Part shown: positions 11,701-37,677 of the stretch, one piece after another
Position numbering within the stretch: the stretch's first letter is position 1
How the letters are laid out: every line of letters begins with the position of its first letter
IMG/VR virus record: IMGVR_UViG_3300034073_003340
Location: 62,001-126,000 of that record
Strand: one strand, 5' to 3'
DNA length: 64,000 nucleotides
Program-made: the position numbers and the translations under genes
The notes under the pieces: model-generated
The model's database searches: none
The model's input: only the letters and a program-made list of their open reading frames with translations
What the model was told of the DNA's origin: nothing

Positions 11701-11867
11701 CAACGGCAATCTCGAGTGTGGAACTTGTCCCAGTCTTGAATGATAGCTATTTTGGTAACCTGCGTGAAATTAGATGTGCTCCTGATGAGCTGTTCTTCGC
11801 AACCGCGCAAGTAAGTGATGTAGATATTATCACTGCGAATACCCCGACAAACCTTAGGATTAGGTAA
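8703..11867 (+). CDS. Baseplate wedge subunit, gp6-like
   Basis: DFNTIRSAMVEY..DLLAY..ENFLDAARRRESILRLA..FGDGRFG..RMVSASDY. Confidence 0.85.
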   Translation: MSQSNRQSELFAGNDWLAAYRAFTEVNLNAFDFNTIRSAMVEYIRRNYPEDFNDWIESSEFVALIDLLAYLGQSLAFRTDINARENFLDAARRRESILRLARSLSYNAKRNYPARGLVKLTEIRSTFDVYNSTGRNLNNIAIRWDDPNNPDWFEQWVIVLNASLIETNPFGVPLKTENIDGVETQLYRVDNVPTTAGNYPFSATVNNQSYNFDICNADFNTSYGFVEREPDPNGPFHLIYRSDGNGNSSPNTGFFLYFKQGTLQKSDFSISEPQENRSIFIDTTGINETDVWVQSVDDFGSLIPDGSWTRVGHVPSDDIVKVLLTTENITYNSIDVDVQNIFQVVTQEQDRIALRFGDGRFGLSPVGNLRIWYRVSANQNLNIRPEDMQGLAINVPFFARNNTQKRLTLTFSLQEAVNNGVNSESNADVRRRAARVYGTQGRMVSASDYNELPVQTNLAVRLKAVNRVYSGQSRFIDLNDPTGNYQNTKVFADDGAFYLLEKNESQEVSQTVASVEEMITKYIADVAASVALRDFYSNWLYKSLPTGTDIYLPSFNRFSNDYTAKSDVRREVRENLELNRTFALGFNNEPGEGWYVLTSSEVNPDLDDPYEFVSTASPGPNSWLIHVEFNNNFWRITNRGLNYVFESERDCKFFFVSEYKSIDPNTGRAGADTVNLLKSPNNFKGVVLTNNEGGQNRLTSDLILKLEDPFIYDDGFHEPSRVKVRFNDRQSDGIPDVPFTYQALKNISTDDQGRLNQLAIVHLNTTDTDGYPVQRLIKRLEPDITQLLPGEYGYVERIDNGNVVDIYKGNPGYLIPRVDDIVGNSLRLNEQPTDYLVDGRSFTLREGVNNLVYQWNHFAPSSHRIDPAISNIVDIFVLTREYNDAMISWRNAGANPADMPKAPSELNLRTTFNPLEEFKMFSDEIVWRPVKFKLLFGQSAEPQFRSKFKIVKLAGTSMSDGEIKSRVIEAVRDFFEVNNWDFGETFFFSELGAYIHRQLATAISSVELVPVLNDSYFGNLREIRCAPDELFFATAQVSDVDIITANTPTNLRIR

Positions 11868-14800
11868 TGGCCAATAATACTCGTAATAACCCGTTTGCTT
11901 TCACACCAATTGTCTTGGATCAAGACTCACATGAAAAGCGTCGAGTTATCAGACAACTTCCTGCCGTTCACCAGACGGAGACTCTACAGAAGTTCTTTGG
12001 ATCTTCTGTTGATCATTTGTTTGATCCCGGCAAGGGTAAGCCTATTAACGGCTATGTGGGTCAAAAGCCACTATGGTATGAACCAGATCAGGACTATTAC
12101 CTTGAAGAATCAACTGACGATAGAAACTTCTATCAGCTTGAAGCTAGTATGGTCAGTAAGAATTCAGAAGGCGAACTAACTGATCTTCTTCCCTACCCTG
12201 ATCTAATCAATCAGTTGCGCTTCCAAGGTGCTCTGGTGAACAATCACCATAGATTGTTCTCACAGGATTTTTATACCTGGTGTCCTCCTATTGATTTGGA
12301 CAAAATTGTCAACTTCCGACAGTATGTATGGCTTCCCTCAGATGGACCTGAGATTGTCAATAATGCCATCATTATCAAGGGACCTACTGTATCATATAAC
12401 AGCTCTGGAAATGATACGACATTTGACCTTCCGGGATATGACAATACCGGAAATGCTTCTCTTCAGGCTTTCTATGACATATCAGTTCTAACTTCAGATC
12501 TAATTGTTGCTGAAGTCGATGGTGAGCCAAGACCATTTTCCTATGTGTCAGGCCAGACCACTATTACTTTTGACCAGAGGCCACCAGCTGACGCATCGGT
12601 ATCAATTTCCGTATATAGTGATCTAGAAAATAATGCGATTGGGTTACCAAATGCTGATCCAGCTGCGTTTGGTGGAATTTCTCTGAGCTCTGGTATGCGA
12701 GTAATTGTCCTCAATGACAAGAATAGCGACTTCAGCCCAGACGACGTTTTCATTGTTGAAGGCGTTGGTCAGAGCATTTTTCTATTGAACGAAAAGGACT
12801 ATGTGGGAGACTCGCTGTCTGATTACATGGTTATGGCTCGTGGTGCCACAAATCGTAACGAGTGGTCAACTGGAAATCGCTGGTTCCATGTCTCAACTCT
12901 GCCGTCAAATCTAGATCCTGACTTTGTTCTGAGACAGAGAGCAAAACGTCCAATCATTGAATTTAATCGTGATCTAGAACTACACAACTATGGTCTGCGT
13001 CGTCGACTTGATGTGGATCTGGTTATAGAGGATATTGAAGACTTAAACGGATATCTAAACCAGAATCCACAGAATGCGGTATTCTCTGGAATATCAGTAT
13101 CCTGCGTGGCCAACAGCCAGATCAATGTAACCGCTATCAATCCGGCTACCAACGCGCCATATGGTAACGTTGATAGCATTAGAGTTCTTGTACGCAATAC
13201 CGTCAATCCGCTACTGAATAATAATATCTTGGTTCTGGTAAACCAAGGTAATGTTCTAAAGCTGATTTTGGAAACTGATGGTGAGAATCCGTCTGGAGAA
13301 CCAGTGGATGGGGAAGTAGTAAAGATCCTCCTAGGTTTCTATGCAGGTAAAAATCTAAACTGGAATGGAGTGAATTGGGTTCTAAGTCAGAATAAAGGGG
13401 ATGTGAACCAGTATCCTCTATTTGAGCTGTATGATTTGAATGGTAATAATCTGGCAGATCCTGTTCTTTATCCTAACTCCACCTTTGCTGGCTCTAGGCT
13501 ATTTTCTTACAAAGAGGATCGATCAGGCCTACGTCCTTCCGATCCAATTCTCGATATGCCTTTGGTGTATGATAACAAGGGTCAAATCCTGTTTGAAAAC
13601 TATCTCAGCACTGAGAGATATCAGTATGTGATCGCTGGGAGATTTCTTGATATTGATGGATTTTATTTCCATAAGATTGGCAATATTGATCCTTCTCTGG
13701 AGACTTTGAGTAACGATTGGCATAAAGCGCCACAAAAAACTCGCCAGTTTATGGTCGATCGCTATGTTAGCGATGGTAGAACCAAATTGTTCCAGATCAG
13801 CCAAGACGCTTTGGAAATTTCAGTTTCCAGAGGTAGGGTCAATACTGATGGTTCTTTTGAACAAACCGCACTGGTCGAAGATAGCGACTTCATTCGTGTT
13901 GATAGACAGATCTTCATTCTCAACATTCAGTTGGGTGACATAATTGAGATCAGAACTTTCAATCCTGCGAATCCACCGGCTGATGCTAAGGGATTTTATG
14001 AGGTTCCTTTGAATCTCCAAGCTAACCCGGATAATGCCGAAGTCTCGGACATGACTAAAGGTGATTTCTATGATCACTTCTCAGAAATCATGAAGAGGCA
14101 GGATGGATTCCAAGGTGCTGAATATTCAACCAACAACTATCGAGACACTGCTAAGCTTCCTAATTTGGGAACCAACATAATCCAACACTCTGCCGGTTTG
14201 TTGAAGACAATGTTGCTGGCAAGCCAGAGTCAGCTGGACATCACTTCAGCAATTCGCTTTGTTGAATCAGAATATGCTCGCTTCAAGGACAAGTTCCAAC
14301 AGCGAATTCTATCATATGTTGCCAATAATCGTATTGGTAATGCCGCCACTTATGACACTTGGATCAATACCGCTCTTACTGAACTGAACAAAGGTAAAAC
14401 CAAGAGTTTTCCATTCTATCTAAGCGGTATGGCGAAGAACGGGACCAATCAGCTTCCTACCTTTATTCCTCCTACCCCAAGTTTTCTCGGGGTATATCCC
14501 CTATACGCTCCTGAGATCATCTCTCAGGAGGTCGACGGTGCTGACGATGTCTGGTTCGTAAGAGGCCATGATGGTTCTCTTACACAGGGACAGAACGAAA
14601 CAGTAGCCAGGGTTCTACTTGCTTTGGAGCAAAGAATCTTTGATAGTGTCCCTGCTGCGATTCGAGAGCGCGAACGTCCAGTTTGCGATTACCAAGCAGC
14701 TTACGGCGATCAGTATCGTCGCAACGACTATTCATATGAAGAATACCTTCAGATCCTTCGTCCGTCCTTTGAACGCTGGGTGGTAGCGTTTAGGCTTGAT

Positions 14801-17800
14801 CCAAGAGAAAATGATCTTGGACAAGATACTTTGGAGTCAAAGATCAACCTAAAAGCCAATCCATGGACCTGGAACTGGTCTTCTACCAGAACCGCTGCCG
14901 GTGAAAAGGTTCCAGGTAATTGGCGTGGTATCTATGAAAAGTTCTTTGGTACTCAACGACCTGACTTGACTCCTTGGGAGTCACTGGGTTTTTCGATCAA
15001 GCCTGCTTGGTGGGATGATCGATATGGTCCTGCTCCATACACTAGCGAAAATTTGGTTCTTTGGGAAGATCTAGAGCGTGGATATATCCACGACGGTGAT
15101 AGAAAAGGTATCAATACCGAATGGGCACGCCCTGGTCTTCGTGACTATATGCCGGTTGATGCTCGAGGTCGATTGCGCCATCCTGGTCCTCGTGAACTCA
15201 TTGCTTTGAACGAGGTCACCGTTGATACTGACCTAGCTTATGCGACTGATCCTTTGATGTGGGAAGACACCAGAGACGATGGTGTGTTGGGATGTGGTAT
15301 CTGTACTTCCGTTCCTTTGGTCCAAGAACGCAAAGCCGATTGGGAATGGGGAGATATTGGCCCAGTTGAGCAGACTTGGAGAAGAACCAGTAACTTCGCT
15401 TTTGCGGCATCTACTGCGGGCTATTTGATGAAGCCAGCAAGTTTTGTTGAAATGGGTTGGAACACTCAAGACATGAGCCTGTTTTTCAAAGGCACCATGG
15501 GTGAACAGTATCTTAATCAAGATACCAAAGGTCGCCCTGCCCACCGTGCTTTACAGGTCCATGGTGAGGTCCTAGAGGACTTTAGTCTGGTAACCAAGGT
15601 TGGTATCCAGCAATGGATAAGTGATTTTCTCACCAGCAGAAACACCTCAATTAATAGTAATCTTGCTGAAAGAGTAAGAGGTCTTGGAACTCAGCTAAGC
15701 TATAAGATTGCCGGTTTCACTGACTCGACTACTCTTGGTGTGGTAAGTGATGCGTTTGGTAGAGTTCCTAGTGAGGACGTTACCGTAGCTCTGTTTAGAA
15801 GTCCTAGCGTTCGTGAAGAAACCTATAGCGGTGTTGCCATTGAATATACTGGTCGTGGTTATGAAGTCTTTGGATACGATGTATTGAATCCTTACTTTTC
15901 CACACTGCCCCCTGCTATAAACGGTGGTAAGATCAGTGTTGGTGATGGTCTAGGTAGCGTATCTATTCCATCATGGCGTCCAACTACCTATTTCAGTGTT
16001 GGTATCACGGTTAGATATCAGGACAACTTTTATCGAGCAGTAAGAACTCATACTTCAGCTACATTTTTTGAAGATGAATTTTGGACGCAAGTGGCTCGTC
16101 CACAGTTTGCTGACGGCTCTGCTTTGATTTGGTATACCGATGGTGAAATTGAACCAATAGTAGAAAAGGTTTCCTATGGAACCGTCTTCAAAGACCCGCA
16201 GGAAGTTGCCAATTTCTTGAACGGATATGAACGTTATTTGGAATCCAAGGGTTGGATTTTTGAGAACGTTGGCGAGGATGAGTTGGAGGTTCGAGATTGG
16301 AAATCTGCTCTAAGAAGCTTTATTACATGGAGTGGTGCCGATGCTAGAGCAGCTGGTGATTTTATCAGCTTGAGTCCAGCAAGTCGCATGGTCCAATTCT
16401 CTACGGATCAAGGAACTATCCAACCAATCGAGCAGATCGTAAATGGTCTGTATGCCATTGTGGATCAGAATGGTCAACCAATAGACAACCAGTTGACTAG
16501 GGTTGTTCGTAATGACGGCAATGTGAGTATCACATGCGACAACTCGACGTCTGGTATATTCGGTCTTCGTCTCTATATAAGCGAGATGGAGCATGTTCTA
16601 GTATTCAATAATACAACTATCTTTGGTGACACCATTTATAGTCCTTTGTTGAATATCAAGCAGCCAAGACTACGTCTACAAGGCTTCAAGACAGTTGCTT
16701 GGAAGGGTAGAATTGACGCTCCTGGTTTCATCATTACTGGTGACACTTTGACACCAAACTTTGAACGATCAGCAGATGATTTCCGTAGATTCTTTGACAT
16801 TGAATCTATGGAAAACAAGAAGCTACAGGATCGCGCCCGCGCAAACTTTGGCTATGAGGAAAAGGAATATCTGAATAATCTACTACTGACTCCAACCAAT
16901 CAGTTTGAGTTCTATCAGGGTATGATCCAACAAAAGGGTTCTCCCACCTCTATGCGTCGTTTGCTGCGCTCAAACTTCATTCGTCACAATAAGGGTCTAC
17001 GTCTTTTTGAAGAATGGGCATTTCGTGTAGGTGATTATGGAGGTCAAGAGGTCGCACCACAGCTTGACATCTTGATCCGTCAAAGTGAATTCAAGCACAA
17101 CCCTCAGTTGATTCAGTTCAGTAACAGCCAGTCTCCAAATTCGTTTGGTATAATTGATGTCATTGATGAAAACGTAGGACAGGATAATCGAACTTTAGAT
17201 GGTCGTTGGCAATGGCGCCCAGATATGCAGAGCATCAATTGGCCACTAGCTGATTTTGGACAAGGCGACACTCCTCTACCAACTGCTGGCTACGTGAATC
17301 TAAGCGAAGTTCGCTTCACTGTTGCTACTGACTCTGATTTTGAAAACTTCTTTGGTGATCAAGAAGCCACTGAGGATCCAATTGAAAATGGTGATCGCGT
17401 ATGGGTCTACGGTATTGGTAACGGAGACCCAAGCACCGCCTGGATGACCTATAGATTCACTGACACCAACTATGACATGGTGAACTCCTTTGTTCCTTCC
17501 CATGTGGACCAGGGTGTTATCATTCAAGTTCAAAATGATCTACAAGGTATTGTTGATATCAATACTGACCCCACTCAGACACCTGTGTTTGTGGCTCAGA
17601 ATCTAGTTTCCAATGAAACCGATGATAATGGTATCGTGGTTTCTGGGGAACGTCTGATACTAAAAGATATAGTGGGATCAGATATCAATCCATTGGCGAC
17701 CTATATTCCCAAGATTTCTAACCGTGCTAGTGTGACACTGGATTCCACTGTTGGATCTGAAACCTTTATCATGAGTTTCTATCCGGAAGCCAAGCAGATC

Positions 17801-20800
17801 ATCCGCAAGGTTCGAGTAACGATTGAAGAAGCCTTTACAGAAGGTTCCACTTTACAAATTGGCCATACTGGAAATCCTGGCTTATTTGTCAACGTCAGAG
17901 AAGAAGCCGATCGCGGTATTTTCCCAACTAACTTTGACCAAGAGCAGGTTTTGATTCAAACTCCGGCTCTATCCTATATGCCACCAAATGTGACCACCGC
18001 CGATGTAAATCTAGTAAGGGTAGGTCGTGTAGGAAACTTCTGTGCTCAGACAATAGTTGAGTGGGAGTGGGTGAGAGCAAGTGACAACCAGTCATTCACT
18101 GGGCAGGTGACTTACATGCGCCCAAGTGATTATGATTCCTCTAGAGATCAAACTGAAGCTTATCTACAGACTATTAGAGTTCCAGTATTGGCGGAGGATG
18201 TTGTAGGAGGTAGCGAAGGAACTCTCACCATCAGAACCAATGGAGTTCAAACTGATACTCAGGTATTAAGATTTGAGCGATCCACTAGTGCTCGTTTGAA
18301 CTTTGTGGATCTTACTCGAACTGGCTCTTATGAATTTGATAGTGTAAACTTCTCAGTTTTCCCTTGGGACTCAAACCTCGCCGGTGAAAATCGTGATATG
18401 ATTGCTACTCTATTCAACACTGGTTCAAATGGATCAGTTAAAATTGAAGTAGATTATCACTACATGAAGGGATTTGAGTTAACAGAATCTATCAACGGTT
18501 CAGTTGTTCCGGTTATTGCTTCTTCTGAAGGAGGAACTGCTAACCTCTTCACATGGGTCAAAACCCGTTATCCTACGCTTTCAGGCATGCCTGAAAGCCT
18601 GTTTGAGGTTGGTGATTTAATTGAAGTAGATTCAGCGCATGATAACCCTGGATATTGGGCGGTTTATTCTCGTTCAACTTCAGGTTGGGATCAAATCAGA
18701 CGACAAAACCGCAAGGTGGATAGTAGCCTGATTACCAATGCGGCGATCTTCAACAACAAGGAAAACCAACTCAAGCTAGTTCTTCAACTCTATGATCCTT
18801 ACAAGGGCTTCATCCCAGGAGTAGCTGATCGTGAGTTGACTTATAAGACTTTCAACGACCCGGCGACCTATAATGATGGTCGACTAATATGGGGCAAGGA
18901 ACAGGTAGGCCAACTATGGTGGGATCTGAGTGCCGTCAGATATCTCGATTATGAAATCTATGATAGATGGAATGGTAGTGACCATGAAGGTGTTACCTAT
19001 CGCTGGAAGAACTGGGGTAAGGTTGCTCCTAACTCCAGCGTTGATATCTACCAGTGGGTTAGAAGTCCAGTAGCACCCAATGGATGGGCAGATTTTGTTG
19101 AAAGTAAGGCAAATCTAAAGATTGATAATAAGCCGTCTGGCACCGTTTCCGAGGATTCCAAGTTTATAACTGACATGGAATGGAATGAAGAAATTCAAGC
19201 GGACGAAACTGTTTACTATTTCTGGGTTAAGAACCCCACGGTAGTGCCAACTTTGGCCTCTAGGAAACTTTCAGCTCAGCAGGTAAGCAACATTCTTACT
19301 AACCCTACTTCAAACGATATTCCCTTCTTTGCGGTCATTGACACCAACAAATGTATTGTTGGTGGTATCAAGCAGTTCTTGAATGAGACTGATACAGTTC
19401 TAAAAATCAAGTGGCTCAAGGAAGCTGACGTCCATAACAACCACCATAAACAGTGGATGCTACTGCGAGAGCAAGATGAGCGTAATACCATAAATGATAC
19501 GCTTTGGAACAAAATGCGAGATAGCATTGTGGGATGGGACGCAACTGAGAAGTCAGTTCCTGACGAAAAGCTTCCAAAGAATCAACAAATTGGAGCACTG
19601 GTCCGTCCAAGACAAAGTTGGTATCCGGCAGATATTACGGATCTAGGTCAGAGACCTAGCCGCGCCGCGCGCGCCGCGTTTGTTGATGCGTTCAATGATA
19701 TAATGAGCAAACAGCCATTTATCGACCAGTGGTTTGGTTGGGAAGAGGTATTTGATAATGGCGAAGCATTACCTTCGGCTGACAGATATGTAACGACCGC
19801 TCTTGATCTTATCGACTTGAGAAACCTTCTACCTGCTACCCGTAATATGGTCCAGGTCGGGGAGTGTGTTCTTATTGAAAATACAATGGAAGTTGCCGGT
19901 TTCTGGACTCTGTGGAGACTTGCTGAAATCAACGGCCAAAGAACATTTGTCATTGAAGACTTCCAGAAATGGAGAATGCAGGAAGGTGAGCTCTGGAATC
20001 TTGCTAACTGGTATGCGGAGGGTTGGAGTGCCAGTAACTTCCCTAACTATAGATTTGCCACTTATGCTGATCGTGACGCCGCCGGTAACCTAGACGTTAC
20101 CTTGCTCAAGGGAACCTTAGTCCAGGTCGACGTCCAGAGTCCTACTGATGACCGATGGTCATGGGATGTTTATACATCTACGTCTAAGTATCAGGTAGCT
20201 AAGGCTCGTTCTACGATGCGTCTAACTGAAGCGTTTTATGATAAGAGTAGAGTTGAATTTGGACCAGTTCAGGTAAATGGTCTTCTCAACGCTAGCGACG
20301 ATAATCGCATTACTCCTGAAAGAATTCAGGAGTTGGCAGATTTGATCAACTTCCGCGACGGTTCAAGAGAAATAGAATTCATCTTGAATACTATGAGGAC
20401 CAAGCTGTTTGATTCCCTACAAAAGAATAATCTATTCTTTGCTATGGTTAAGAGCGCATTCAAACAGAGTATCAATATCGACTGGGCATTCAAGACTTCA
20501 TTCTTGTATCTTGGTGGCTATTCAGAAAATCTAAGACAAAGCCCAGTGGCGTTCAAAGATCAGATTGATAACGTTATTGCGTATCTGGAAGAGGTGAAAC
20601 CTTACCACGTTAAGATTCGCGAATATGTTCGTCGATTGAGCTATGGACCAGATTTGGCCGCTTTGGCTATGACTGATTTTGACAAGCCGGTTTACCCGTC
20701 AGGGACGTCAAATAGAGTTCTGGATGTAAACAACACGGTTGATCGCTCTATTATGGAAATCAACCGTCCTTGGAGAGACTGGTTTGAAAACTATCTCAAT

Positions 20801-22267
20801 GAAAATCGAGACCTAAACAATTGGGACGAGAACTGGAATGGTGTTCGTCGAATGAAATTAAAGGTCAAGTTTGATCGTATCTCTTGTGGAACAATTAGAG
20901 GTTGGGATACTTCTCCGTGGGATCCTGCTTTGCTTGTTTACAGTCAGCTTGGTAGCTCAACTCAAAGTTTGAGTCAGCTAAGCTCGCTATACAGAACTGG
21001 TTCAACATCTGGATATAACTTTTATCGAGATCAATCAGTGGAAACTATAGAAGAACGAAATCTACTCGTCCGTAGAAATATTGTTACTCCTAGCCGTCCA
21101 GGAACCATCGTAACGGTGCTACAGACAAATGAAAACTTCATGTGGTCTGGTAGCGAGTGGATCAAATTTGAATCGCTAGGCTGGGATCAGGATCCTGACA
21201 TGGGAACCGCTACTAGGATTGAGTCTTCTTATAGACCAGAGCCTGGTATGAAGAGACGTGATGATCCTGGTCTGATTGCCGGATGTGAGTTTGATGGTAC
21301 CGTGATCTCTGATAGTTTTCAGGCCGACGCTTGGGATATCTTCGAATGGGACTCCACTGGATATAGTCAGGGCTTGCGTGAACGAGCAGGGGTTGATCAA
21401 GAAAGTGTTGATGGTAACACGACACCTCAAGATGAGGCAGACCCTGCTTATATCGGCACTACTGGAAATGAATTCAGTCAACCAGCGGTGAATGGAGGTA
21501 GACCACATGAGCTAGTTCAAATCAGAGGTGTTGAAAGCATTGTGGTAAATGTTTCCAGAAATAACGGTCCATATCAAAAGTCATTTATGAACCACAAAGG
21601 CGATTGGCAAGATATGTTGATTTCTGGTTCATCTCTGTCGTTTGTTTCATGGGACCAAACAAACCACAAATTGGTTGTCAGCGTTGCCTCTTGGACTGAA
21701 GACGCACAGGGCTTTACTCCGCTTCATGACCCTCAGAACCCTTCTACGGGCTTTATAAGGGACGTTATGGCGAGCAGAGCCTATCGCTCTACAAGTAATA
21801 TCGATATGACCTCAGCAGGAACAAAAACCTTTAAGTTGAGGAATTTGGGAGAAGTAGAAGGTATTCCTGCTGGTTTGCGCGGTGACGAAGTCAAAGTTGC
21901 TGTCATTAATCCAAAGAATCCTTCCATTAGAGCTATCGGAACCATTTCAAATTCCAAAGGAAACGAAATCAATTGGGATGGAAATGTTGAGATAACGTTT
22001 GATTCTGATGGATTCGTGGATTTAGGTTCTGGTAAGAGCTGGAATATCATCCCGGTTGATATGTTCAACACCCCAGGCATTGTCTGGGTTGGTGATGCTA
22101 GATTCACCTATAATAGTTTGACAATCAACGGCAACATGGTTGAACTCAATGAGGTCTTCCTATCTGGCAACACCTTGGCTCCCCTTAATATAGGCGAAGA
22201 TAGTATAAGCCTAGTCAAGACTAGCCCGGTTTTTGATGGTTCAAAACAACGTCAAATGGCCCGATAA
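11867..22267 (+). CDS. Giant virion structural protein (3466 aa; baseplate wedge/gp7-like position)
   Basis: Follows the gp6-like gene; VKPYHVKIRE motif and WD-rich C-terminus; internal CBM5/12-like module. Confidence 0.7.
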   Translation: MANNTRNNPFAFTPIVLDQDSHEKRRVIRQLPAVHQTETLQKFFGSSVDHLFDPGKGKPINGYVGQKPLWYEPDQDYYLEESTDDRNFYQLEASMVSKNSEGELTDLLPYPDLINQLRFQGALVNNHHRLFSQDFYTWCPPIDLDKIVNFRQYVWLPSDGPEIVNNAIIIKGPTVSYNSSGNDTTFDLPGYDNTGNASLQAFYDISVLTSDLIVAEVDGEPRPFSYVSGQTTITFDQRPPADASVSISVYSDLENNAIGLPNADPAAFGGISLSSGMRVIVLNDKNSDFSPDDVFIVEGVGQSIFLLNEKDYVGDSLSDYMVMARGATNRNEWSTGNRWFHVSTLPSNLDPDFVLRQRAKRPIIEFNRDLELHNYGLRRRLDVDLVIEDIEDLNGYLNQNPQNAVFSGISVSCVANSQINVTAINPATNAPYGNVDSIRVLVRNTVNPLLNNNILVLVNQGNVLKLILETDGENPSGEPVDGEVVKILLGFYAGKNLNWNGVNWVLSQNKGDVNQYPLFELYDLNGNNLADPVLYPNSTFAGSRLFSYKEDRSGLRPSDPILDMPLVYDNKGQILFENYLSTERYQYVIAGRFLDIDGFYFHKIGNIDPSLETLSNDWHKAPQKTRQFMVDRYVSDGRTKLFQISQDALEISVSRGRVNTDGSFEQTALVEDSDFIRVDRQIFILNIQLGDIIEIRTFNPANPPADAKGFYEVPLNLQANPDNAEVSDMTKGDFYDHFSEIMKRQDGFQGAEYSTNNYRDTAKLPNLGTNIIQHSAGLLKTMLLASQSQLDITSAIRFVESEYARFKDKFQQRILSYVANNRIGNAATYDTWINTALTELNKGKTKSFPFYLSGMAKNGTNQLPTFIPPTPSFLGVYPLYAPEIISQEVDGADDVWFVRGHDGSLTQGQNETVARVLLALEQRIFDSVPAAIRERERPVCDYQAAYGDQYRRNDYSYEEYLQILRPSFERWVVAFRLDPRENDLGQDTLESKINLKANPWTWNWSSTRTAAGEKVPGNWRGIYEKFFGTQRPDLTPWESLGFSIKPAWWDDRYGPAPYTSENLVLWEDLERGYIHDGDRKGINTEWARPGLRDYMPVDARGRLRHPGPRELIALNEVTVDTDLAYATDPLMWEDTRDDGVLGCGICTSVPLVQERKADWEWGDIGPVEQTWRRTSNFAFAASTAGYLMKPASFVEMGWNTQDMSLFFKGTMGEQYLNQDTKGRPAHRALQVHGEVLEDFSLVTKVGIQQWISDFLTSRNTSINSNLAERVRGLGTQLSYKIAGFTDSTTLGVVSDAFGRVPSEDVTVALFRSPSVREETYSGVAIEYTGRGYEVFGYDVLNPYFSTLPPAINGGKISVGDGLGSVSIPSWRPTTYFSVGITVRYQDNFYRAVRTHTSATFFEDEFWTQVARPQFADGSALIWYTDGEIEPIVEKVSYGTVFKDPQEVANFLNGYERYLESKGWIFENVGEDELEVRDWKSALRSFITWSGADARAAGDFISLSPASRMVQFSTDQGTIQPIEQIVNGLYAIVDQNGQPIDNQLTRVVRNDGNVSITCDNSTSGIFGLRLYISEMEHVLVFNNTTIFGDTIYSPLLNIKQPRLRLQGFKTVAWKGRIDAPGFIITGDTLTPNFERSADDFRRFFDIESMENKKLQDRARANFGYEEKEYLNNLLLTPTNQFEFYQGMIQQKGSPTSMRRLLRSNFIRHNKGLRLFEEWAFRVGDYGGQEVAPQLDILIRQSEFKHNPQLIQFSNSQSPNSFGIIDVIDENVGQDNRTLDGRWQWRPDMQSINWPLADFGQGDTPLPTAGYVNLSEVRFTVATDSDFENFFGDQEATEDPIENGDRVWVYGIGNGDPSTAWMTYRFTDTNYDMVNSFVPSHVDQGVIIQVQNDLQGIVDINTDPTQTPVFVAQNLVSNETDDNGIVVSGERLILKDIVGSDINPLATYIPKISNRASVTLDSTVGSETFIMSFYPEAKQIIRKVRVTIEEAFTEGSTLQIGHTGNPGLFVNVREEADRGIFPTNFDQEQVLIQTPALSYMPPNVTTADVNLVRVGRVGNFCAQTIVEWEWVRASDNQSFTGQVTYMRPSDYDSSRDQTEAYLQTIRVPVLAEDVVGGSEGTLTIRTNGVQTDTQVLRFERSTSARLNFVDLTRTGSYEFDSVNFSVFPWDSNLAGENRDMIATLFNTGSNGSVKIEVDYHYMKGFELTESINGSVVPVIASSEGGTANLFTWVKTRYPTLSGMPESLFEVGDLIEVDSAHDNPGYWAVYSRSTSGWDQIRRQNRKVDSSLITNAAIFNNKENQLKLVLQLYDPYKGFIPGVADRELTYKTFNDPATYNDGRLIWGKEQVGQLWWDLSAVRYLDYEIYDRWNGSDHEGVTYRWKNWGKVAPNSSVDIYQWVRSPVAPNGWADFVESKANLKIDNKPSGTVSEDSKFITDMEWNEEIQADETVYYFWVKNPTVVPTLASRKLSAQQVSNILTNPTSNDIPFFAVIDTNKCIVGGIKQFLNETDTVLKIKWLKEADVHNNHHKQWMLLREQDERNTINDTLWNKMRDSIVGWDATEKSVPDEKLPKNQQIGALVRPRQSWYPADITDLGQRPSRAARAAFVDAFNDIMSKQPFIDQWFGWEEVFDNGEALPSADRYVTTALDLIDLRNLLPATRNMVQVGECVLIENTMEVAGFWTLWRLAEINGQRTFVIEDFQKWRMQEGELWNLANWYAEGWSASNFPNYRFATYADRDAAGNLDVTLLKGTLVQVDVQSPTDDRWSWDVYTSTSKYQVAKARSTMRLTEAFYDKSRVEFGPVQVNGLLNASDDNRITPERIQELADLINFRDGSREIEFILNTMRTKLFDSLQKNNLFFAMVKSAFKQSINIDWAFKTSFLYLGGYSENLRQSPVAFKDQIDNVIAYLEEVKPYHVKIREYVRRLSYGPDLAALAMTDFDKPVYPSGTSNRVLDVNNTVDRSIMEINRPWRDWFENYLNENRDLNNWDENWNGVRRMKLKVKFDRISCGTIRGWDTSPWDPALLVYSQLGSSTQSLSQLSSLYRTGSTSGYNFYRDQSVETIEERNLLVRRNIVTPSRPGTIVTVLQTNENFMWSGSEWIKFESLGWDQDPDMGTATRIESSYRPEPGMKRRDDPGLIAGCEFDGTVISDSFQADAWDIFEWDSTGYSQGLRERAGVDQESVDGNTTPQDEADPAYIGTTGNEFSQPAVNGGRPHELVQIRGVESIVVNVSRNNGPYQKSFMNHKGDWQDMLISGSSLSFVSWDQTNHKLVVSVASWTEDAQGFTPLHDPQNPSTGFIRDVMASRAYRSTSNIDMTSAGTKTFKLRNLGEVEGIPAGLRGDEVKVAVINPKNPSIRAIGTISNSKGNEINWDGNVEITFDSDGFVDLGSGKSWNIIPVDMFNTPGIVWVGDARFTYNSLTINGNMVELNEVFLSGNTLAPLNIGEDSISLVKTSPVFDGSKQRQMAR

Positions 22268-33796: not shown

Positions 33797-34114
33797 TTAT
33801 TGTGCTCCTCCGAAAGTGAGTTTGAAAAGAACGGCGATATCAGGTTTTTCAAAATACCACCGTGAACCATTGCCATTGTGCCAAAAACTACTGCCTTTAT
33901 CCATACACCACGTCTTCATTTGGGAGATGGCAAAACCATCTGTTGGCTTGATATCAACGGTTGTCATCTCAGGCCAAGCTTCGCGGAGTCTTTTACTCCA
34001 ATGCTTGTCACGAGTGCTGATACCAACTGGCGGACAAAATAGAAGGCCCTGTTCTCGCCAGACCTTGATGTAGGCCTGAGTGGCCAGGCTTTGTGCTGTC
34101 TTGAAGTCCGTCAT
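33797..34114 (-). CDS. Hypothetical protein, FKL-motif family
   Basis: TGATG overlap with pth2; ends WYFEKPDIAVLFKLTF. Confidence 0.7.
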   Translation of the reverse strand: MTDFKTAQSLATQAYIKVWREQGLLFCPPVGISTRDKHWSKRLREAWPEMTTVDIKPTDGFAISQMKTWCMDKGSSFWHNGNGSRWYFEKPDIAVLFKLTFGGAQ

Positions 34115-34572
34115 CAGCCGACCACCGAGAATCGCTTGGTGATCGCATGAGCCTGCTCCTTGGTACAAGGACCAATACCAAGCGCAGTCACGATGGGATT
34201 ACCATCGAATGCCGTGCCGGGCATGATGTGGTTCTTGTCAATGATAAGCGAGGTGATCAGGCCAGCTTCCTGTGCGGCTTCATAAGCGCGCATAATTGCG
34301 GCTTCGTTCTTGGCCTTAAGGATGACCTGGGTGCCGATGAAGTCTGGGCCCTGGTAAACGCGCAGGAGCTCAGGATCGCGACGGCTCGCGAGAAGCACAC
34401 AGTTCTTGGCCGCATGACAAGCCTGACTTGCCATCTTGCCTGGAGTCATGTCCAGGTCGCCGCGAATGATGCTGTAGATGCGAAGCTTTTCGGAGGCTGC
34501 TTCGAATGCCTGGTAGTCGTTGTCGTTGTCGTAACGAGCAGCGGCTTCCTACAAGAAAGAATTCGTGATCAT
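34114..34572 (-). CDS. pth2: Peptidyl-tRNA hydrolase, Pth2 family, with in-frame UAG at codon 8 (34551-34549)
   Basis: KLRIYSIIRGDLDMTPGKMASQACHA and TALGIGP Pth2 motifs; the conserved first strand lies upstream of the track ATG 34449; every upstream in-frame ATG/GTG/TTG (SD-backed ATG 34572) precedes a TAG. Confidence 0.85.
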
Positions 34573-34612
34573 TTTCATTCCTTTCATCTTTTGTCCAACA
34601 TCGGACAACTTC

Positions 34613-34640
34613 AACTTAGTAGGCAATTAGGATATGTCAA
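34613..34640 (-). promoter_or_regulatory. Sigma70-type promoter of pth2
   Basis: TTGACA-N16-TAAGTT upstream of ATG 34572. Confidence 0.55.
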
Positions 34641-34648
34641 CCTACTTT

Positions 34649-35011
34649 TTACCTCCAACGCAATTTAAACATCATTGCGTCTTTGGAATTCTCAAAAACA
34701 ACACCAACGCTAGTGCTACAACCACTAGACCAGCCCACGGCTTCCCAACTACCAAACTTGGTATTATCGGCGCACCATTGCTTGATTTCACCCATGGAAT
34801 GCCATGTGAAGCCAAACATACGGACCAGGAACCAGCCCGGAAACTTGCTGTTGATGGAAGGGGCGAAATCAGAGTCCTCAAAGTCATCATCCTCGAAGAG
34901 CGCATTACGCTCTTGCTGGGCTGACTCAGCTTGCTCGGGAGTTTCTTCGGCGATAACACCATCACGGTCGAAATAATCGACCCACACTAATTCATTCATC
35001 TCAACACTCAC
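34649..35011 (-). CDS. Hypothetical protein, FKL-motif family
   Basis: Ends VVFENSKDAMMFKLRWR. Confidence 0.7.
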   Translation of the reverse strand: MSVEMNELVWVDYFDRDGVIAEETPEQAESAQQERNALFEDDDFEDSDFAPSINSKFPGWFLVRMFGFTWHSMGEIKQWCADNTKFGSWEAVGWSSGCSTSVGVVFENSKDAMMFKLRWR

Positions 35012-35091
35012 TTTCTAAACTAAATCACAAACGGATTAGCAGCGAGTGGAGGTGCCCTTGGGGCCTAGTGGTGTGTTAGGATCTTTTTCAT
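35008..35091 (-). promoter_or_regulatory. Putative regulatory mini-ORF MKKILTHH*(UAG)APRAPPLAANPFVI*(UAG)FRK*(UGA)
   Basis: Manual translation; amber followed by a RAPP motif; terminal TGA overlaps the GTG start of the next gene. Confidence 0.5.
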
Positions 35092-35094
35092 GCT

Positions 35095-35454
35095 CTACTT
35101 ATACTGATCTAATACGTAAGAGTCAATAACTAATGACAATTTAGACATTATGGCGTCGTCAGCAGTCTGCGTTCTCACTATCAGACGCATTTGGTATTTT
35201 ACTGGCCCTGAAGTCTCTCTTATCTCCATATAGGTATAGAAATGACCCTTTGTATAATCAAGCAATTGCTTGAAAATCTTAGGATTCGGCCAATAATAAA
35301 ATGATGGGTGTTCGCAATCAAACCAGTCTTTTGCGAACCAATGCTGAAGAGAGATCTCCGTTGACCATCCCTCGGTTACTACTACCTCGGTGGATCTATT
35401 GAATTGAATATAGTCTGATCTAAGAGCCTTTGTGACTCTGCGGATGTCAGTCAA
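35095..35454 (-). CDS. Hypothetical protein, degenerate FKL-motif family; TAG stop
   Basis: DDAIMSKL near the C-terminus; overlaps the upstream gene. Confidence 0.6.
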   Translation of the reverse strand: MTDIRRVTKALRSDYIQFNRSTEVVVTEGWSTEISLQHWFAKDWFDCEHPSFYYWPNPKIFKQLLDYTKGHFYTYMEIRETSGPVKYQMRLIVRTQTADDAIMSKLSLVIDSYVLDQYK

Positions 35455-35920: not shown

Positions 35921-36739
35921 TCAATCAGCTTCTGGTGGTGTCTTGTTGATATCACCGCGCTGGGCCTGATACCAGTTGTAGACGCAGCGGTCGAGACCAA
36001 TCGCAATCTCGAGGACTAACGCGTCTTTTTCCACAATATCTTTCTTGCCCTGGAAGGTCAGCTTCTGAGGGAAATCAGTCCGAAGGCTGATCGAGCAGAC
36101 TTCCATCCACTTGTCGCCATTCCAAATTTCCACATCCATGGTTCGCTTGCTATAAGCGGGCAGTCGATCACTTTCCACCAGCCGGGTGGGTAGGTGTACC
36201 ATTGCGCCGATCATCTGCTGAACCTTGGGCAACATGGCTTCCTGATAATCCATACCAGAATCAGCAGTGAAGATACACTGGAACTCCTGCTGGTAGAACT
36301 CTTTTAGCCGCATATGCTTGGTGGGCTGGATAATTTCTCGACGAAAGCTTTTACCGGCTTGCCATACGACCAAGGGAGGGAAAACCTTGGGATGAACGTT
36401 ATTCAGTAGATGTTGCGCATAGGCATAGCTACCTGGCGTGGTCTCGGGACGAAGCGCGAGGATGCGTGGTGGAGGGCTAGCCTCACTATCGACCCACTTT
36501 TGATCTTCCTCACTCAATCGAGGATCTTGCTCCCAAATGTCGTTGGCAGTGTAATTGACGTTGAGGAGATCACGCGGGTTGAGCAGTGGAGCCTCGATCT
36601 GGAAAAACTTCCAGCGATCATTGAGGGCCTGAAGTTCTACCTGAATACGAGCGGCAAAGAAATCTCGCATAGTCTCACGAAGCTTGATCTCTTCCTCGTT
36701 CCAAAACACAAGGCCATTGATATTGAAGATGTTCTGCAT
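35921..36739 (-). CDS. Glycyl-tRNA synthetase (alpha2-type)-like catalytic core without anticodon-binding domain
   Basis: LRPETT, QAGKSFRRE..RLKEFYQQEFQ (motif 2), AYSKRTMDVE, EVCSISLRTDF, VLEIAIGLDR (motif 3); ends about 20 aa after motif 3. Confidence 0.85.
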   Translation of the reverse strand: MQNIFNINGLVFWNEEEIKLRETMRDFFAARIQVELQALNDRWKFFQIEAPLLNPRDLLNVNYTANDIWEQDPRLSEEDQKWVDSEASPPPRILALRPETTPGSYAYAQHLLNNVHPKVFPPLVVWQAGKSFRREIIQPTKHMRLKEFYQQEFQCIFTADSGMDYQEAMLPKVQQMIGAMVHLPTRLVESDRLPAYSKRTMDVEIWNGDKWMEVCSISLRTDFPQKLTFQGKKDIVEKDALVLEIAIGLDRCVYNWYQAQRGDINKTPPEAD

Positions 36740-37113: not shown

Positions 37114-37131
37114 GATTTACCTCAAATTCGG

Positions 37132-37204
37132 CCTCCCCGCCGAGATTCGAACTCGGGTCTCGCGATTTTAGAGATCGCTGCTCTACCAACTGAGCTACGG
37201 GAAG
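37132..37204 (-). tRNA. Amber suppressor tRNA, anticodon CUA
   Basis: Canonical cloverleaf: acceptor CTTCCCG/CGGGGAG, D-arm GCTC-AGTTGGTA-GAGC, anticodon arm GCGAT-CT[CTA]AA-ATCGC (anticodon 37171-37169), T-arm CCGAG-TTCGAAT-CTCGG; G73; followed by CCG, not CCA. Confidence 0.93.
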
Positions 37205-37215
37205 ATGTAACCTGT

Positions 37216-37677
37216 TTAGGATTTATTCTCCAGCGCGTCAAGACGCTCCATGATCTCGCGGAGCAATCGAACTTGCTCGTCCGACTGTTTTTTGAGAATT
37301 TCTTGTTCTTCGTGCGTAAAGGCATTGCTGTCAACGATCAAATGTGCTGACATCTTTGCCGTGATAATCGGCACGACCAGAAACACGCAAATAAACATGA
37401 ACGCACCGCCAACCAACTTGGAGATCAAGTGGGTGGGATATAGATCACCATACCCCACCGTCGTAGCAGTGACAGTGGCCCACCAAAAGCTATTGGTGAG
37501 GTCTTTGCCCTCTACGATACTAAAGGTGACCGCAGCGATAGTCATTGTTATAATGAACAACATGACCATGGGAAGGACCTTGTTGGCCATCTTCTGCATG
37601 ATGTTCATTTGAACCATAGGTTGGGCAATAGCAATATCATAGATATCACTACCAACCTTTTCAATTCCCTTACGCAT
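37216..37677 (-). CDS. Potassium channel (2-TM, KcsA-like)
   Basis: [16 protein letters not shown] selectivity filter between two TM helices. Confidence 0.92.

What the first reader, a model, noticed from the sequence alone, without database searches (positions are those of the whole stretch)
35008..35097. Amber ladder with a RAPP arrest motif coupled to the next gene
Seen: the upstream gene ends in TAG and the frame continues S-MKKILTHH-TAG-APRAPP-LAANPFVI-TAG-FRK-TGA. That is three in-frame ambers in 26 codons, and the final TGA overlaps the GTG start (35011) of the next gene. Established: RAPP/RAGP motifs cause ribosome arrest in ApdP/ApdA/SecM-type peptides. Inference: only ribosomes that read through UAG reach the stall motif, giving a readthrough-sensing leader that controls downstream genes or generates peptidyl-tRNA for Pth2.
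Basis: partly seen in the sequence, partly recalled or inferred. Interest (0 to 1): 0.75.

Follow-up and report, generated by a model that had tools for sequence, protein, structure and literature searches.

The report
Amber-gated ribosome-arrest leader in jumbo phage
A giant phage that carries its own amber-suppressor tRNA appears to switch on two neighbouring genes only when the UAG stop codon is read through, one via a tiny leader peptide ending in a ribosome-stalling RAPP motif that unmasks the next gene's ribosome-binding site, and one (a peptidyl-tRNA hydrolase) via a UAG at its eighth codon.

Summary
The string is real, on the minus strand, but the 'ladder' is not the signal. Three TAGs in 26 codons is what chance gives (3 of 60 TAG-ending genes; about 2.2 expected), and only the middle TAG (35067-35065) is conserved. 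That TAG is invariant in 20 related jumbo-phage loci.

The shared grammar is: sigma70-like promoter ending 5-7 nt before an ATG, 4-8 codons, TAG, 2-15 codons, R-[A/G/S/D/P]-P-P, then no conservation. Arg uses six different codons and variation falls on third positions, so the frame is translated across the TAG. The Pro-Pro codons pair with the ribosome-binding site of the next gene, using different complementary sequences in different clades. A ribosome at UAG leaves that hairpin closed; one stalled at RAP|P opens it.

A conserved tRNA(CUA) lies about 2 kb upstream. About 500 nt downstream, PTH2 carries a conserved in-frame TAG at codon 8. In Atu_ph07, whose suppressor is opal, both sites carry TGA.

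The ladder, the first amber and the GTG/TGA coupling are incidental. This is a new variant of arrest-peptide and leader-peptide control. Nothing has been shown experimentally.

The parts
37130..37204 (-). tRNA with anticodon CUA (amber suppressor). Discriminator G73. It is conserved with covarying stems in related phages.
   Evidence: ARAGORN; Rfam tRNA 63.1 bits; orthologs aligned, anticodon loop CU-CUA-AA invariant.
35921..36739 (-). 272-aa class II aaRS catalytic core of dimeric-GlyRS type, with no anticodon-binding domain. Candidate charging enzyme for the tRNA(CUA); this is inference only.
   Evidence: PF00587 at 4e-9; GlyRS chains and NCBIfam GlyRS models are the best matches over residues ~95-254 only; syntenic with the tRNA(CUA) in relatives.
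35098..35126 (-). Sigma70-like promoter of the leader: -35 TTGACT (35126-35121), 17-nt spacer, -10 TATAAG (35103-35098). The predicted start of transcription is at or next to the A of the leader ATG, giving a leaderless mRNA.
   Evidence: Direct reading; conserved at every locus, with the -10 box ending 5-7 nt before the ATG; one of only 11 such consensus motifs in 436 kb.
35068..35091 (-). Leader ORF, first part: ATG (35091-89) then KKILTHH.
   Evidence: Relatives encode M-[KN]-[KT]-x-x-[TH]-H-[HL], with differences mostly at third codon positions.
35065..35067 (-).
   Evidence: Invariant in 20 of 20 loci; no variant in 4 DNA runs.
35047..35064 (-). Post-gate codons A-P-R-A-P-P. RAPP is 35058-35047. 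[quoted passage not shown]
   Evidence: The Arg column uses AGG/AGA/CGC/CGG/CGA/CGT; the Pro columns vary only at position 3; x = A/G/S/D/P; conservation collapses after PP. Arrest mechanism from PMC10951233 and PMC12992588.
35000..35051 (-). SD-sequestering hairpin: 5' arm 35051-35036 (starts inside the first Pro codon), 3' arm 35023-35000 (ends one base before the AUG of the next gene).
   Evidence: RNAfold MFE and pair list; same architecture in all loci with different sequences; cognate duplexes average -14.5 against -8.9 kcal/mol for between-clade pairs.
34649..34999 (-). Regulated gene (116 aa): acidic N-terminus and a conserved VGWxSGCSxSVGV...DAMxFKLRW domain. Function unknown.
   Evidence: Homolog alignments; 111 unannotated clusters; no Pfam/PHROG/NCBIfam family; AF2 model pLDDT 73 with no significant fold match.
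34613..34640 (-). Separate conserved promoter-like element upstream of PTH2: TTGACA 34640-34635 and TAAGTT 34618-34613.
34549..34572 (-). PTH2 true start and second amber gate: ATG 34572-70, then I-T-N-S-F-L, then TAG 34551-49.
   Evidence: The same short peptide plus TAG is found in more than 25 related loci. TGA stands at this place in Atu_ph07.
34114..34548 (-). PTH2 coding sequence after the gate: N-terminal extension 34548-34450 plus the ORF that gene callers find, 34449-34114.
   Evidence: The PF01981 match grows from profile positions 13-113 (64 bits) to 3-113 (76 bits) when the extension is included. Two relatives lack the internal Met.

Best explanation
The element is a regulatory leader peptide gated by an amber codon.

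A conserved sigma70-like promoter starts transcription at or next to the leader's AUG. Ribosomes translate MKKILTHH and meet UAG. If host RF1 wins, they terminate; the hairpin 35051-35000 stays closed and buries the ribosome-binding site of the next gene. If the phage's own tRNA(CUA) decodes the UAG, the ribosome adds A-P-R-A-P and stalls. [quoted passage not shown] The stalled ribosome covers the 5' arm of the hairpin, frees the ribosome-binding site, and allows translation of the 116-aa downstream gene.

A second, simpler gate is a UAG at codon 8 of the true PTH2 reading frame. It makes full-length peptidyl-tRNA hydrolase depend on the same suppressor. Together these form a small suppressor-dependent regulon next to the tRNA(CUA) and an anticodon-blind aaRS-like gene.

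Shown by sequence comparison: translation of one frame across the TAG, conservation of TAG and RxPP, the covarying hairpin, and the match between gate codon and suppressor type. Inferred: the leaderless start, the actual stalling, who charges the tRNA and with what, and the biological purpose.
For: 1. Twenty distinct loci share promoter, ATG, 4-8 codons, TAG, 2-15 codons and RxPP directly upstream of the same gene family.

2. There is coding signal across the TAG. Eighteen of 28 variable sites fall on codon position 3 (P = 8e-4). Between the TAG and PP there are 42 synonymous and 10 non-synonymous codon differences. Arg is encoded by six codons. After PP all three positions vary equally.

3. 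The x of RxPP is A (9), S (6), G (3), D (1) or P (1). RAPP and RGPP are reported as robust arrest cores; RSPP and RDPP are reported as permissive and under-represented in proteomes (PMC12992588). The stall state is defined structurally (PMC10951233).

4. In every locus the PP codons pair with the downstream RBS. Arms start -6 to +3 nt from the first Pro codon and end -1 to +5 nt from the start codon. The complementary sequences differ between clades. Cognate duplexes average -14.5 against -8.9 kcal/mol for foreign pairs. Constrained folds keep the hairpin with a ribosome at UAG and lose it with a ribosome at RxP|P.

5. A conserved tRNA(CUA) with covarying stems lies in the same cluster.

6. 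Independent second gate: PTH2 has an in-frame TAG at codon 3-9 in more than 25 loci, and the post-TAG segment is part of the Pfam domain.

7. Covariation: Atu_ph07's only suppressor is opal (PMC6102473). It has TGA at the PTH2 gate and a TGA four codons before CCU-CCA upstream of the other gene.

8. In other samples a related, abundant phage matches the window only from the -35 box to the second Pro codon. The TAG shows no variation.
Against: - There is no experimental or transcriptomic evidence. No RNA run was listed, so the transcription start, leaderless initiation, read-through and stalling are all inferred.
- The nascent chain at the stall would be only 13-15 residues. Published RAPP peptides are longer, and their N-terminal context modulates arrest.
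- Part of the PP conservation could come from the anti-SD role of CCUCC.
- The SD in the window's clade (GUGAGUG) is weak.
- The tRNA's amino-acid identity and its charging enzyme are unknown.
- tRNA(CUA) presence could not be checked in a few fragmentary contigs.
- The Atu_ph07 covariation is a single evolutionary event.
- A crude genome-wide scan found no further gated genes, so the 'regulon' is two genes.
Confidence: 0.62

Rival explanations
1. RNA-only 5' UTR. The conserved block is a promoter plus an SD-sequestering hairpin (an RNA switch or thermometer). The mini-ORF either is not translated or simply terminates at UAG. The 'RxPP' reading is a by-product of a conserved CCUCC anti-SD sequence.
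For: CCUCC(A) is the anti-SD sequence and pairs with the RBS in every locus. No known RNA family matched, which is neutral.
Against: - An RNA-only constraint does not explain an Arg kept through six codons, including AGR/CGN switches.
- It does not explain the excess of third-position variation on both sides of the TAG, or the absence of any other stop between ATG and PP in 20 loci.
- It does not explain x being restricted to A/G/S/D/P, or the invariant in-frame TAG.
- In clade C the paired segment is CGUUCUCC (the R-S-P codons), yet PP is still kept.
Confidence: 0.1
2. Amber-gated translational coupling without true arrest. Read-through ribosomes open the hairpin simply by translating through it and then terminate near the downstream start, allowing re-initiation. 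RxPP only slows them.
For: In many loci the read-through frame ends at or overlaps the downstream start: ATGA in L014, L018 and Phosso, and GTGA plus a later ATGA in the window. In five loci it is fused in frame. The L024, L025 and L056 variants lack RxPP but keep ATG-short ORF-TAG and an ATGA overlap.
Against: RxPP is kept in 20 of 20 loci of this type, and conservation ends exactly at PP. In several loci the stop lies 17-30 nt upstream of the start (L010, L011, L020). The window itself has a non-conserved TAG and TGA before the start.
Confidence: 0.15
3. The UAG senses host RF1 activity or general termination efficiency, for example after host shut-off, rather than the phage's suppressor tRNA. 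Read-through is by near-cognate host tRNAs.
For: RF1 and any UAG-reading tRNA compete at the same codon, so the element necessarily responds to their ratio. The phage has no release-factor gene of its own.
Against: A conserved tRNA(CUA) lies in the same cluster in nearly all loci. The opal-suppressor phage Atu_ph07 has TGA, not TAG, at both gates.
Confidence: 0.1
4. Chance. This is an ordinary intergenic spacer that happens to contain stops in one frame and a RAPP string.
For: Three TAGs in 26 codons is within chance expectation.
Against: Position-specific conservation in 20 independent assemblies, coding periodicity, covarying structure and gate/suppressor covariation. The full grammar occurs essentially once in 436 kb, with one weak second hit; the TAA and TGA control versions give 1 and 0.
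Confidence: 0.02

Closest known systems
RAPP-type ribosome arrest peptides (ApdA, ApdP, ApcA; SecM with RAGP) that regulate a downstream gene
   Same: A C-terminal R-A/G-P-P core. Conservation ends at the arrest point. The peptide is encoded just upstream of, and co-directional with, a gene whose RBS sits in a stem-loop that a stalled ribosome would open. The variants seen (RAPP, RGPP, RSPP, RDPP) match the published arrest-competent or permissive set (PMC12992588, PMC10951233, PMC7897499). ApdP comes from Sinorhizobium, the host genus of the related phage Phosso.
   Different: The peptide is only about 15 residues at the stall and has no signal peptide or membrane segment, so release by pulling force cannot be the control. 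Control would lie in whether the ribosome reaches the motif at all, through an in-frame UAG. It is phage-encoded and probably leaderless. The regulated gene is not part of the Sec/YidC machinery.
Stop-codon recoding in phages (TAG or TGA reassignment; 'code-change modules' of suppressor tRNA, aaRS and RF upstream of lysis or late genes; Borges et al., bioRxiv 10.1101/2021.08.26.457843)
   Same: A phage-encoded suppressor tRNA next to an aaRS-like gene. In-frame stops make expression of particular genes depend on the suppressor, as a timing or regulatory device.
   Different: The genome uses the standard code, with no TAG-specific split ORFs. Only two genes are gated, each by a single stop within the first nine codons. 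One gate acts through a leader peptide and SD unmasking rather than within the protein. There is no release-factor gene.
Leader-peptide attenuation (trp, his, pheST) and drug-dependent leader stalling (ermCL, cat)
   Same: A short leader ORF in which the ribosome's progress past a diagnostic codon, set by the availability of one decoding factor, decides between alternative mRNA structures controlling the downstream gene. As in ermC, the output is SD unmasking by a stalled ribosome.
   Different: The diagnostic codon is a stop codon read by a virus-encoded suppressor. Decoding success, not failure, leads to the stall. There is no terminator in this clade; the distant variants L024, L025 and L056 do have a terminator-like hairpin.
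Synthetic amber-suppression switches (UAG placed in the tna leader peptide; Liu, Qi, Yanofsky and Arkin 2011, as reviewed in PMC6412442)
   Same: [quoted passage not shown]
   Different: Those switches are engineered and act on Rho-dependent transcription termination. This element is natural, acts on translation initiation, and adds an arrest motif.
prfB (RF2) autoregulation by an early in-frame UGA
   Same: An in-frame stop codon near the 5' end whose fate reports the balance between a release factor and an alternative decoding event.
   Different: prfB uses a +1 frameshift at CUU-UGA with an internal SD. Here the zero frame is kept across the stop, and the alternative event is decoding by a suppressor tRNA.

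Membership tests
RAPP-like ribosome arrest peptides | R-A/G-P-P (RxPP) core at the C-terminal end of the conserved region | tested here: met
   RAPP at 35058-35047. Across 20 loci: RAPP 9, RSPP 6, RGPP 3, RDPP 1, RPPP 1.
RAPP-like ribosome arrest peptides | Selection acts on the amino acids, and conservation ends at the stall site | tested here: met
   Six Arg codons; 42 synonymous against 10 non-synonymous differences; all three codon positions vary after PP. The DNA similarity island ends at the second Pro codon.
RAPP-like ribosome arrest peptides | A downstream co-directional gene whose RBS lies in a structure that the stalled ribosome disrupts | tested here: met
   Folding with and without ribosome footprints, covarying arms and duplex-energy controls. 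Computational only.
RAPP-like ribosome arrest peptides | An N-terminal signal or membrane segment that lets the localisation machinery release the arrest (monitoring substrate) | tested here: not met
   The leader has only 8 residues before the UAG and about 15 at the stall, with no hydrophobic segment.
RAPP-like ribosome arrest peptides | Demonstrated elongation arrest (toeprint, peptidyl-tRNA accumulation) | not testable with these tools
   No RNA or ribosome data were available.
Stop-codon-recoded phages (code 15 type) | A phage-encoded suppressor tRNA for the recoded stop | tested here: met
   Two tRNA(CUA) genes in the genome, one of them in the window.
Stop-codon-recoded phages (code 15 type) | Many genes interrupted by the recoded stop, with gene calls that improve under the alternative code | tested here: not met
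   ORFs are long and dense under code 11. Same-frame adjacency across TAG (34 cases at 80 or more codons) is no higher than across TAA (36) or TGA (35). 5'-proximal gates show no genome-wide excess.
Stop-codon-recoded phages (code 15 type) | A code-change module containing a release factor | tested here: not met
   No PF00472 match in the 436-kb genome.
Leader-peptide transcription attenuators | An intrinsic terminator that alternates with an antiterminator downstream of the leader ORF | tested here: not met
   There is no terminator-like site between the leader and the gene in the window; the hairpin is not followed by a U-run. The distant variant L024 does have one.
PTH2 peptidyl-tRNA hydrolase (PF01981) | A full-length Pfam domain match above the gathering score | tested here: met
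   76.4 bits over profile positions 3-113 when the post-TAG extension is included; NCBIfam Pth2 models also hit.

The most novel reading that the evidence does not exclude
A clade of jumbo phages that infect alpha-proteobacteria runs a natural amber-suppression gene switch. A phage tRNA(CUA), possibly charged by the neighbouring anticodon-blind GlyRS-type enzyme as a private tRNA/synthetase pair, is the master input. Its activity is read out by two gate designs: a leaderless UAG-gated RxPP arrest peptide that unmasks an RBS, and a codon-8 UAG in PTH2. The gate codon co-evolves with the suppressor type (TAG with CUA, TGA with UCA). This would be the first arrest peptide whose trigger is stop-codon suppression, and a natural counterpart of synthetic genetic-code-expansion switches.
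Probability: 0.4. Interest if true: 0.9.

Novelty: new variant of a known kind. Interest (0 to 1): 0.8.

Why it matters
Arrest peptides are known as sensors of protein export, membrane insertion, small molecules or drugs. Phage suppressor tRNAs are known from genome-wide recoding. This element joins the two: an arrest peptide whose input would be decoding of a stop codon, in a phage that otherwise uses the standard code.

If confirmed, it would:
- give a function to suppressor tRNAs in standard-code jumbo phages, where they are usually noted and left unexplained;
- show that single 5'-proximal stops can act as regulatory gates, which gene callers systematically miss (PTH2 is mis-started in every record examined);
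- show that RxPP can work in a leader of about 15 residues;
- provide a compact natural part (promoter, 14 codons and a hairpin, about 130 nt) for suppressor-dependent expression.

It is directly testable, because Phosso and Atu_ph07 are cultured on laboratory Sinorhizobium and Agrobacterium strains.

Tried and rejected
1. **Global TAG recoding.** Rejected: dense long ORFs under code 11, and no TAG-specific split genes.
2. **First guess of an N4-like phage**, from the 3,466-aa ORF. Rejected: the window lies in a 435,856-bp record with terminal repeats and 59 tRNAs.
3. **Statistical significance of the three-amber ladder.** Rejected.
4. **Direct similarity searches.** Megablast and tblastn of the upstream ORF against phage records and viral contigs found nothing. 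Relatives were reached through PTH2, the downstream protein and the aaRS-like protein instead.
5. **Known RNA families.** Only the tRNA matched.
6. **RNAalifold on a MAFFT alignment of the hairpin region** gave no structure, because the arms are not in register. It was replaced by per-locus folds and cognate against non-cognate duplex energies.
7. **Function of the regulated gene.** No Pfam, PHROG or NCBIfam family. The atlas gave only viral hypotheticals. The AF2 model (pLDDT 73) had no significant PDB or AFDB match.
8. **Complex prediction** of the aaRS-like dimer with the tRNA was not folded by the tool. It is no evidence either way.
9. **RNA-seq support.** No RNA run was listed.
10. **Is Atu_ph07's opal suppressor an anticodon variant of the same tRNA backbone?** No pattern match.
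11. **Genome-wide scan for further 5'-proximal amber gates.** No excess over the TAA and TGA controls; only PTH2 stands out.
12. **First structure job.** That sequence was left out.
Full report
**1. The observation**

The reported string is on the minus strand. The 119-aa ORF 35454..35095 ends in TAG (35097-35095). The same frame then reads S, MKKILTHH, TAG (35067-65), APRAPPLAANPFVI, TAG (35022-20), FRK, TGA (35010-08), and that TGA overlaps a GTG at 35011. So the description is accurate.

As a 'ladder' it is not unusual. In a crude call of 606 genes in the whole genome, stops are TAA 286, TGA 260 and TAG 60. Three of the 60 TAG-ending genes have at least three in-frame TAGs within 26 codons. 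About 2.2 are expected from the overall TAG frequency.

**2. Genome context**

The window is part of a 435,856-bp virus record with direct terminal repeats, so this is a jumbo phage. It has 59 tRNA genes, two of them with anticodon CUA. One of these is in the window at 37204..37130, on the same strand as the finding (Rfam tRNA 63 bits).

The genome uses the standard code. ORFs are long and dense. Same-frame ORF pairs separated by a single TAG are no more common than for TAA or TGA. No release-factor gene is present.

The neighbours on the minus strand, in order, are:
- a K+ channel-like gene;
- the tRNA(CUA);
- a conserved 123-aa ORF;
- a 272-aa class II aaRS catalytic core, closest to dimeric GlyRS and lacking an anticodon-binding domain;
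- a dual-specificity-phosphatase-like gene;
- the 119-aa ORF;
- the finding;
- a 116-aa ORF;
- PTH2.

**3. Relatives**

The downstream protein, PTH2 and the aaRS-like protein led to syntenic loci in several sources:
- Sinorhizobium phage Phosso and Agrobacterium phage Atu_ph07;
- IMG/VR contigs;
- metagenome contigs;
- contigs encoding members of the downstream protein family.

Twenty distinct loci carry the same construction directly upstream of the homolog of the 116-aa gene:
- a sigma70-like promoter (TTGAC-N16-18-TATAAG or TAAATA) whose -10 box ends 5-7 nt before an ATG;
- 4-8 sense codons;
- TAG;
- 2-15 sense codons;
- R-x-P-P;
- then sequence with no conservation, of variable length and with a variable stop.

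Examples (# marks the TAG):
- MKKILTHH#APRAPP (window)
- MKKILTHH#APRGPP
- MKTNIHV#APRAPP
- MNTNKHH#VQRGPP
- MNKKYTHL#LHRSRSPP (Phosso)
- MNTHY#HHPSQARDPP
- MKKILTHH#ALPRPPP
- MTQTSNIFL#LYRRLVRPRAPP

The TAG is present in 20 of 20. The third TAG and the TGA are not conserved. Homologs show that the downstream gene starts at ATG 34999.

Laying contigs of four metagenome runs on the region gave three results. There is no variation at the conserved TAG. A related phage, about 25 times more abundant, matches the window only from 35128 to 35048, that is from the -35 box to the second Pro codon. Its differences there include ATC to ATT (synonymous) and TAG to TAA at 35097-95.

**4. Is the frame translated across the TAG?**

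Anchored on the Arg, the first 11 loci use AGG, CGC, CGG, AGG, CGG, CGA, CGA, AGA, CGT, CGT and CGT. The two Pro columns vary only at the third position. The ten codons after PP have 8-9 different amino acids per column.

In two gap-free subgroups, 18 of 28 variable sites between the ATG and PP fall on codon position 3 (binomial P = 8e-4). Between the TAG and PP there are 42 synonymous and 10 non-synonymous pairwise codon differences. After PP the three positions vary equally.

No ATG, GTG or TTG lies between the TAG and the Arg. The only way to translate RxPP in this frame is therefore to start at the leader ATG and read the TAG. There is no consistent SD before the leader ATG, while the -10 box sits 5-7 nt upstream. 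A leaderless mRNA is thus the simplest reading; this is inference.

**5. The output**

In all loci the minimum-free-energy fold of the leader has a hairpin. Its 5' arm begins at the Pro-Pro codons and its 3' arm is the ribosome-binding region of the downstream gene. In the window, 35051-35036 pairs with 35023-35000, ending one base before the AUG.

The paired sequences differ between clades:
- CCACUCAC with GUGAGUGG;
- CCUCCUCCA with UGGAGGA;
- CGUUCUCC with GGAGAACG;
- CCUCCUUU with AAAGGAG;
- CCUCCUCUCUUUGGUCAA with UUGACCCAAGGAGAG.

The arms start -6 to +3 nt from the first Pro codon and end -1 to +5 nt from the start codon. Cognate duplexes average -14.5 kcal/mol, against -8.9 for between-clade pairings, and they beat shuffles in 12 of the first 14 loci.

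Two constrained folds were compared. A footprint for a ribosome waiting at UAG keeps the hairpin. A footprint with the first Pro codon in the P site removes it and frees the RBS.

**6. Link to known arrest peptides**

[quoted passage not shown] RAPP and RGPP are the most robust cores, need little N-terminal context and resist EF-P. RSPP and RDPP are permissive and depleted from proteomes (PMC12992588). The variants found here are RAPP 9, RSPP 6, RGPP 3, RDPP 1 and RPPP 1. Conservation that stops at the arrest point, together with an RBS-masking hairpin, is the usual anatomy of such leaders.

The element differs from monitoring substrates in two ways. It has no export signal, and the nascent chain is only about 15 residues. 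Control would therefore be at the UAG.

**7. A second gate**

The 199-nt 'gap' before PTH2 holds another conserved promoter-like element, a 5' UTR hairpin and an SD. The sequence then reads ATG ATC ACG AAT TCT TTC TTG TAG GAA..., in frame with PTH2.

The post-TAG segment (EAAARYDNDNDYQAFEAASEKLRIYSIIRGDLD) belongs to the domain. With it, the PF01981 match extends from profile positions 13-113 (64 bits) to 3-113 (76 bits). Distant PTH2 homologs start directly with MKQVIIIRRDLHM, and two relatives lack the internal Met.

A short ATG-led peptide followed by TAG precedes this extension in more than 25 loci, including distant phages of about 576 kb. Gene callers start PTH2 at the internal Met in every record seen.

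**8. Covariation with the suppressor**

The Atu_ph07 paper reports 33 tRNAs and a single suppressor, with anticodon UCA (PMC6102473). Two pattern searches found no tRNA(CUA) in that genome.

In Atu_ph07 the PTH2 gate reads MIGEHF-TGA-INYEELG...KLRIYSIVRDDLEM. Upstream of the other gene, the preceding ORF ends in TGA, four codons before CCU-CCA. That is the same spacing as in the window, and CCUCCA pairs with the downstream GGAG. There the motif is FKPP followed directly by TAG, not RxPP.

So the gate codon follows the suppressor type at both elements. This is one evolutionary event, but it hits two sites.

**9. What remains unknown**

- The regulated 116-aa protein belongs to a family of at least 111 clusters, all unannotated. 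Its model has no significant structural match.
- The amino acid carried by the tRNA(CUA) is unknown. G73 and the anticodon loop are conserved while the acceptor stems vary.
- The aaRS-like gene sits next to the tRNA(CUA) in this clade. It also occurs in other jumbo phages next to other tRNAs, so a private pair is only a hypothesis.
- No RNA data were listed.
- A crude genome-wide scan found no other gated genes.

**10. Literature and verdict**

Searches for a natural stop-codon-gated arrest or leader peptide found none. The nearest are the synthetic UAG-in-tna-leader switch (reviewed in PMC6412442) and phage 'code-change modules' (bioRxiv 10.1101/2021.08.26.457843).

I conclude that the finding is a real, conserved regulatory element. 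The ladder, the first amber and the GTG/TGA overlap are incidental. The element is a new variant of arrest-peptide and leader-peptide control, joined to phage suppressor-tRNA biology.

Noticed in passing
window 34549-34572 (-), with 34114-34548: PTH2 is amber-gated. Its true start is ATG 34572, there is an in-frame TAG at codon 8 (34551-49), and the N-terminal strand of the domain lies after the TAG. This is conserved in more than 25 loci. Gene callers mis-start the gene at the internal Met everywhere.
   Followed up: yes
L019 (Atu_ph07) about 3978-4075 and 4890-5001: In the opal-suppressor phage both equivalent sites carry TGA instead of TAG. Upstream of the 116-aa homolog the motif is FKPP followed directly by TAG. 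The stop-to-CCUCCA spacing and the anti-SD pairing are the same.
   Followed up: partly
L024 4771-4925; L025 24-163; L056 upstream of 5001: Distant relatives have a different leader: -10 box, ATG, 1-2 sense codons (ML / MYL / MFL), then TAG-LHL..., and a 45-50-codon open frame that runs through a strong terminator-like hairpin with a U-run. It ends in TGA overlapping the downstream ATG. This may be an amber-gated transcription attenuator or coupling device; there is no RxPP.
   Followed up: partly
window 34591-34608 (-): A conserved 5' UTR hairpin lies before the PTH2 SD: TTGTCC-GATGTT-GGACAA. One relative has compensatory changes (GACGTCC...GGACGC) and an invariant loop. Its role is unknown.
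   Followed up: no
genome G000:C1:293258-293333 (outside the window): A second tRNA(CUA) has a different backbone and discriminator A73, at the edge of the large tRNA array. It may insert a different amino acid.
   Followed up: no
window 35921-36739 (-); L006 7893-8783: The 272-aa GlyRS-type catalytic core without an anticodon-binding domain occurs in about 20 jumbo-phage records, always near tRNA genes. In Xanthomonas phage XbC2 it directly follows a tRNA-Ser(GCT). In this clade it follows the tRNA(CUA) and a conserved 123-aa ORF.
   Followed up: partly
window 35048-35128, runs X3 and X4: A related phage at about 590x depth (against about 23x for this phage) in the same subsurface and soil samples shares only the promoter-to-PP island and a short stretch at 34629-34696. 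The gene in between is replaced by unrelated sequence of similar length.
   Followed up: partly
window 35054-35064 (-): A small 4-bp hairpin (GCCC-CAA-GGGC) starts one base after the gate UAG. Similar hairpins occur in most loci of the RAPP and RGPP clades but not in the RSPP clade. It could modulate termination or read-through, or it could be a by-product of the GC-rich A-P-R-A codons.
   Followed up: partly
window 11867-22267 (+): A single 3,466-aa ORF lies among plus-strand genes of the window. It was not characterised.
   Followed up: no
window 37216-37677 (-): A potassium-channel-like gene (PF07885) lies immediately upstream of the tRNA(CUA) and is conserved at this position in several relatives.
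   Followed up: no
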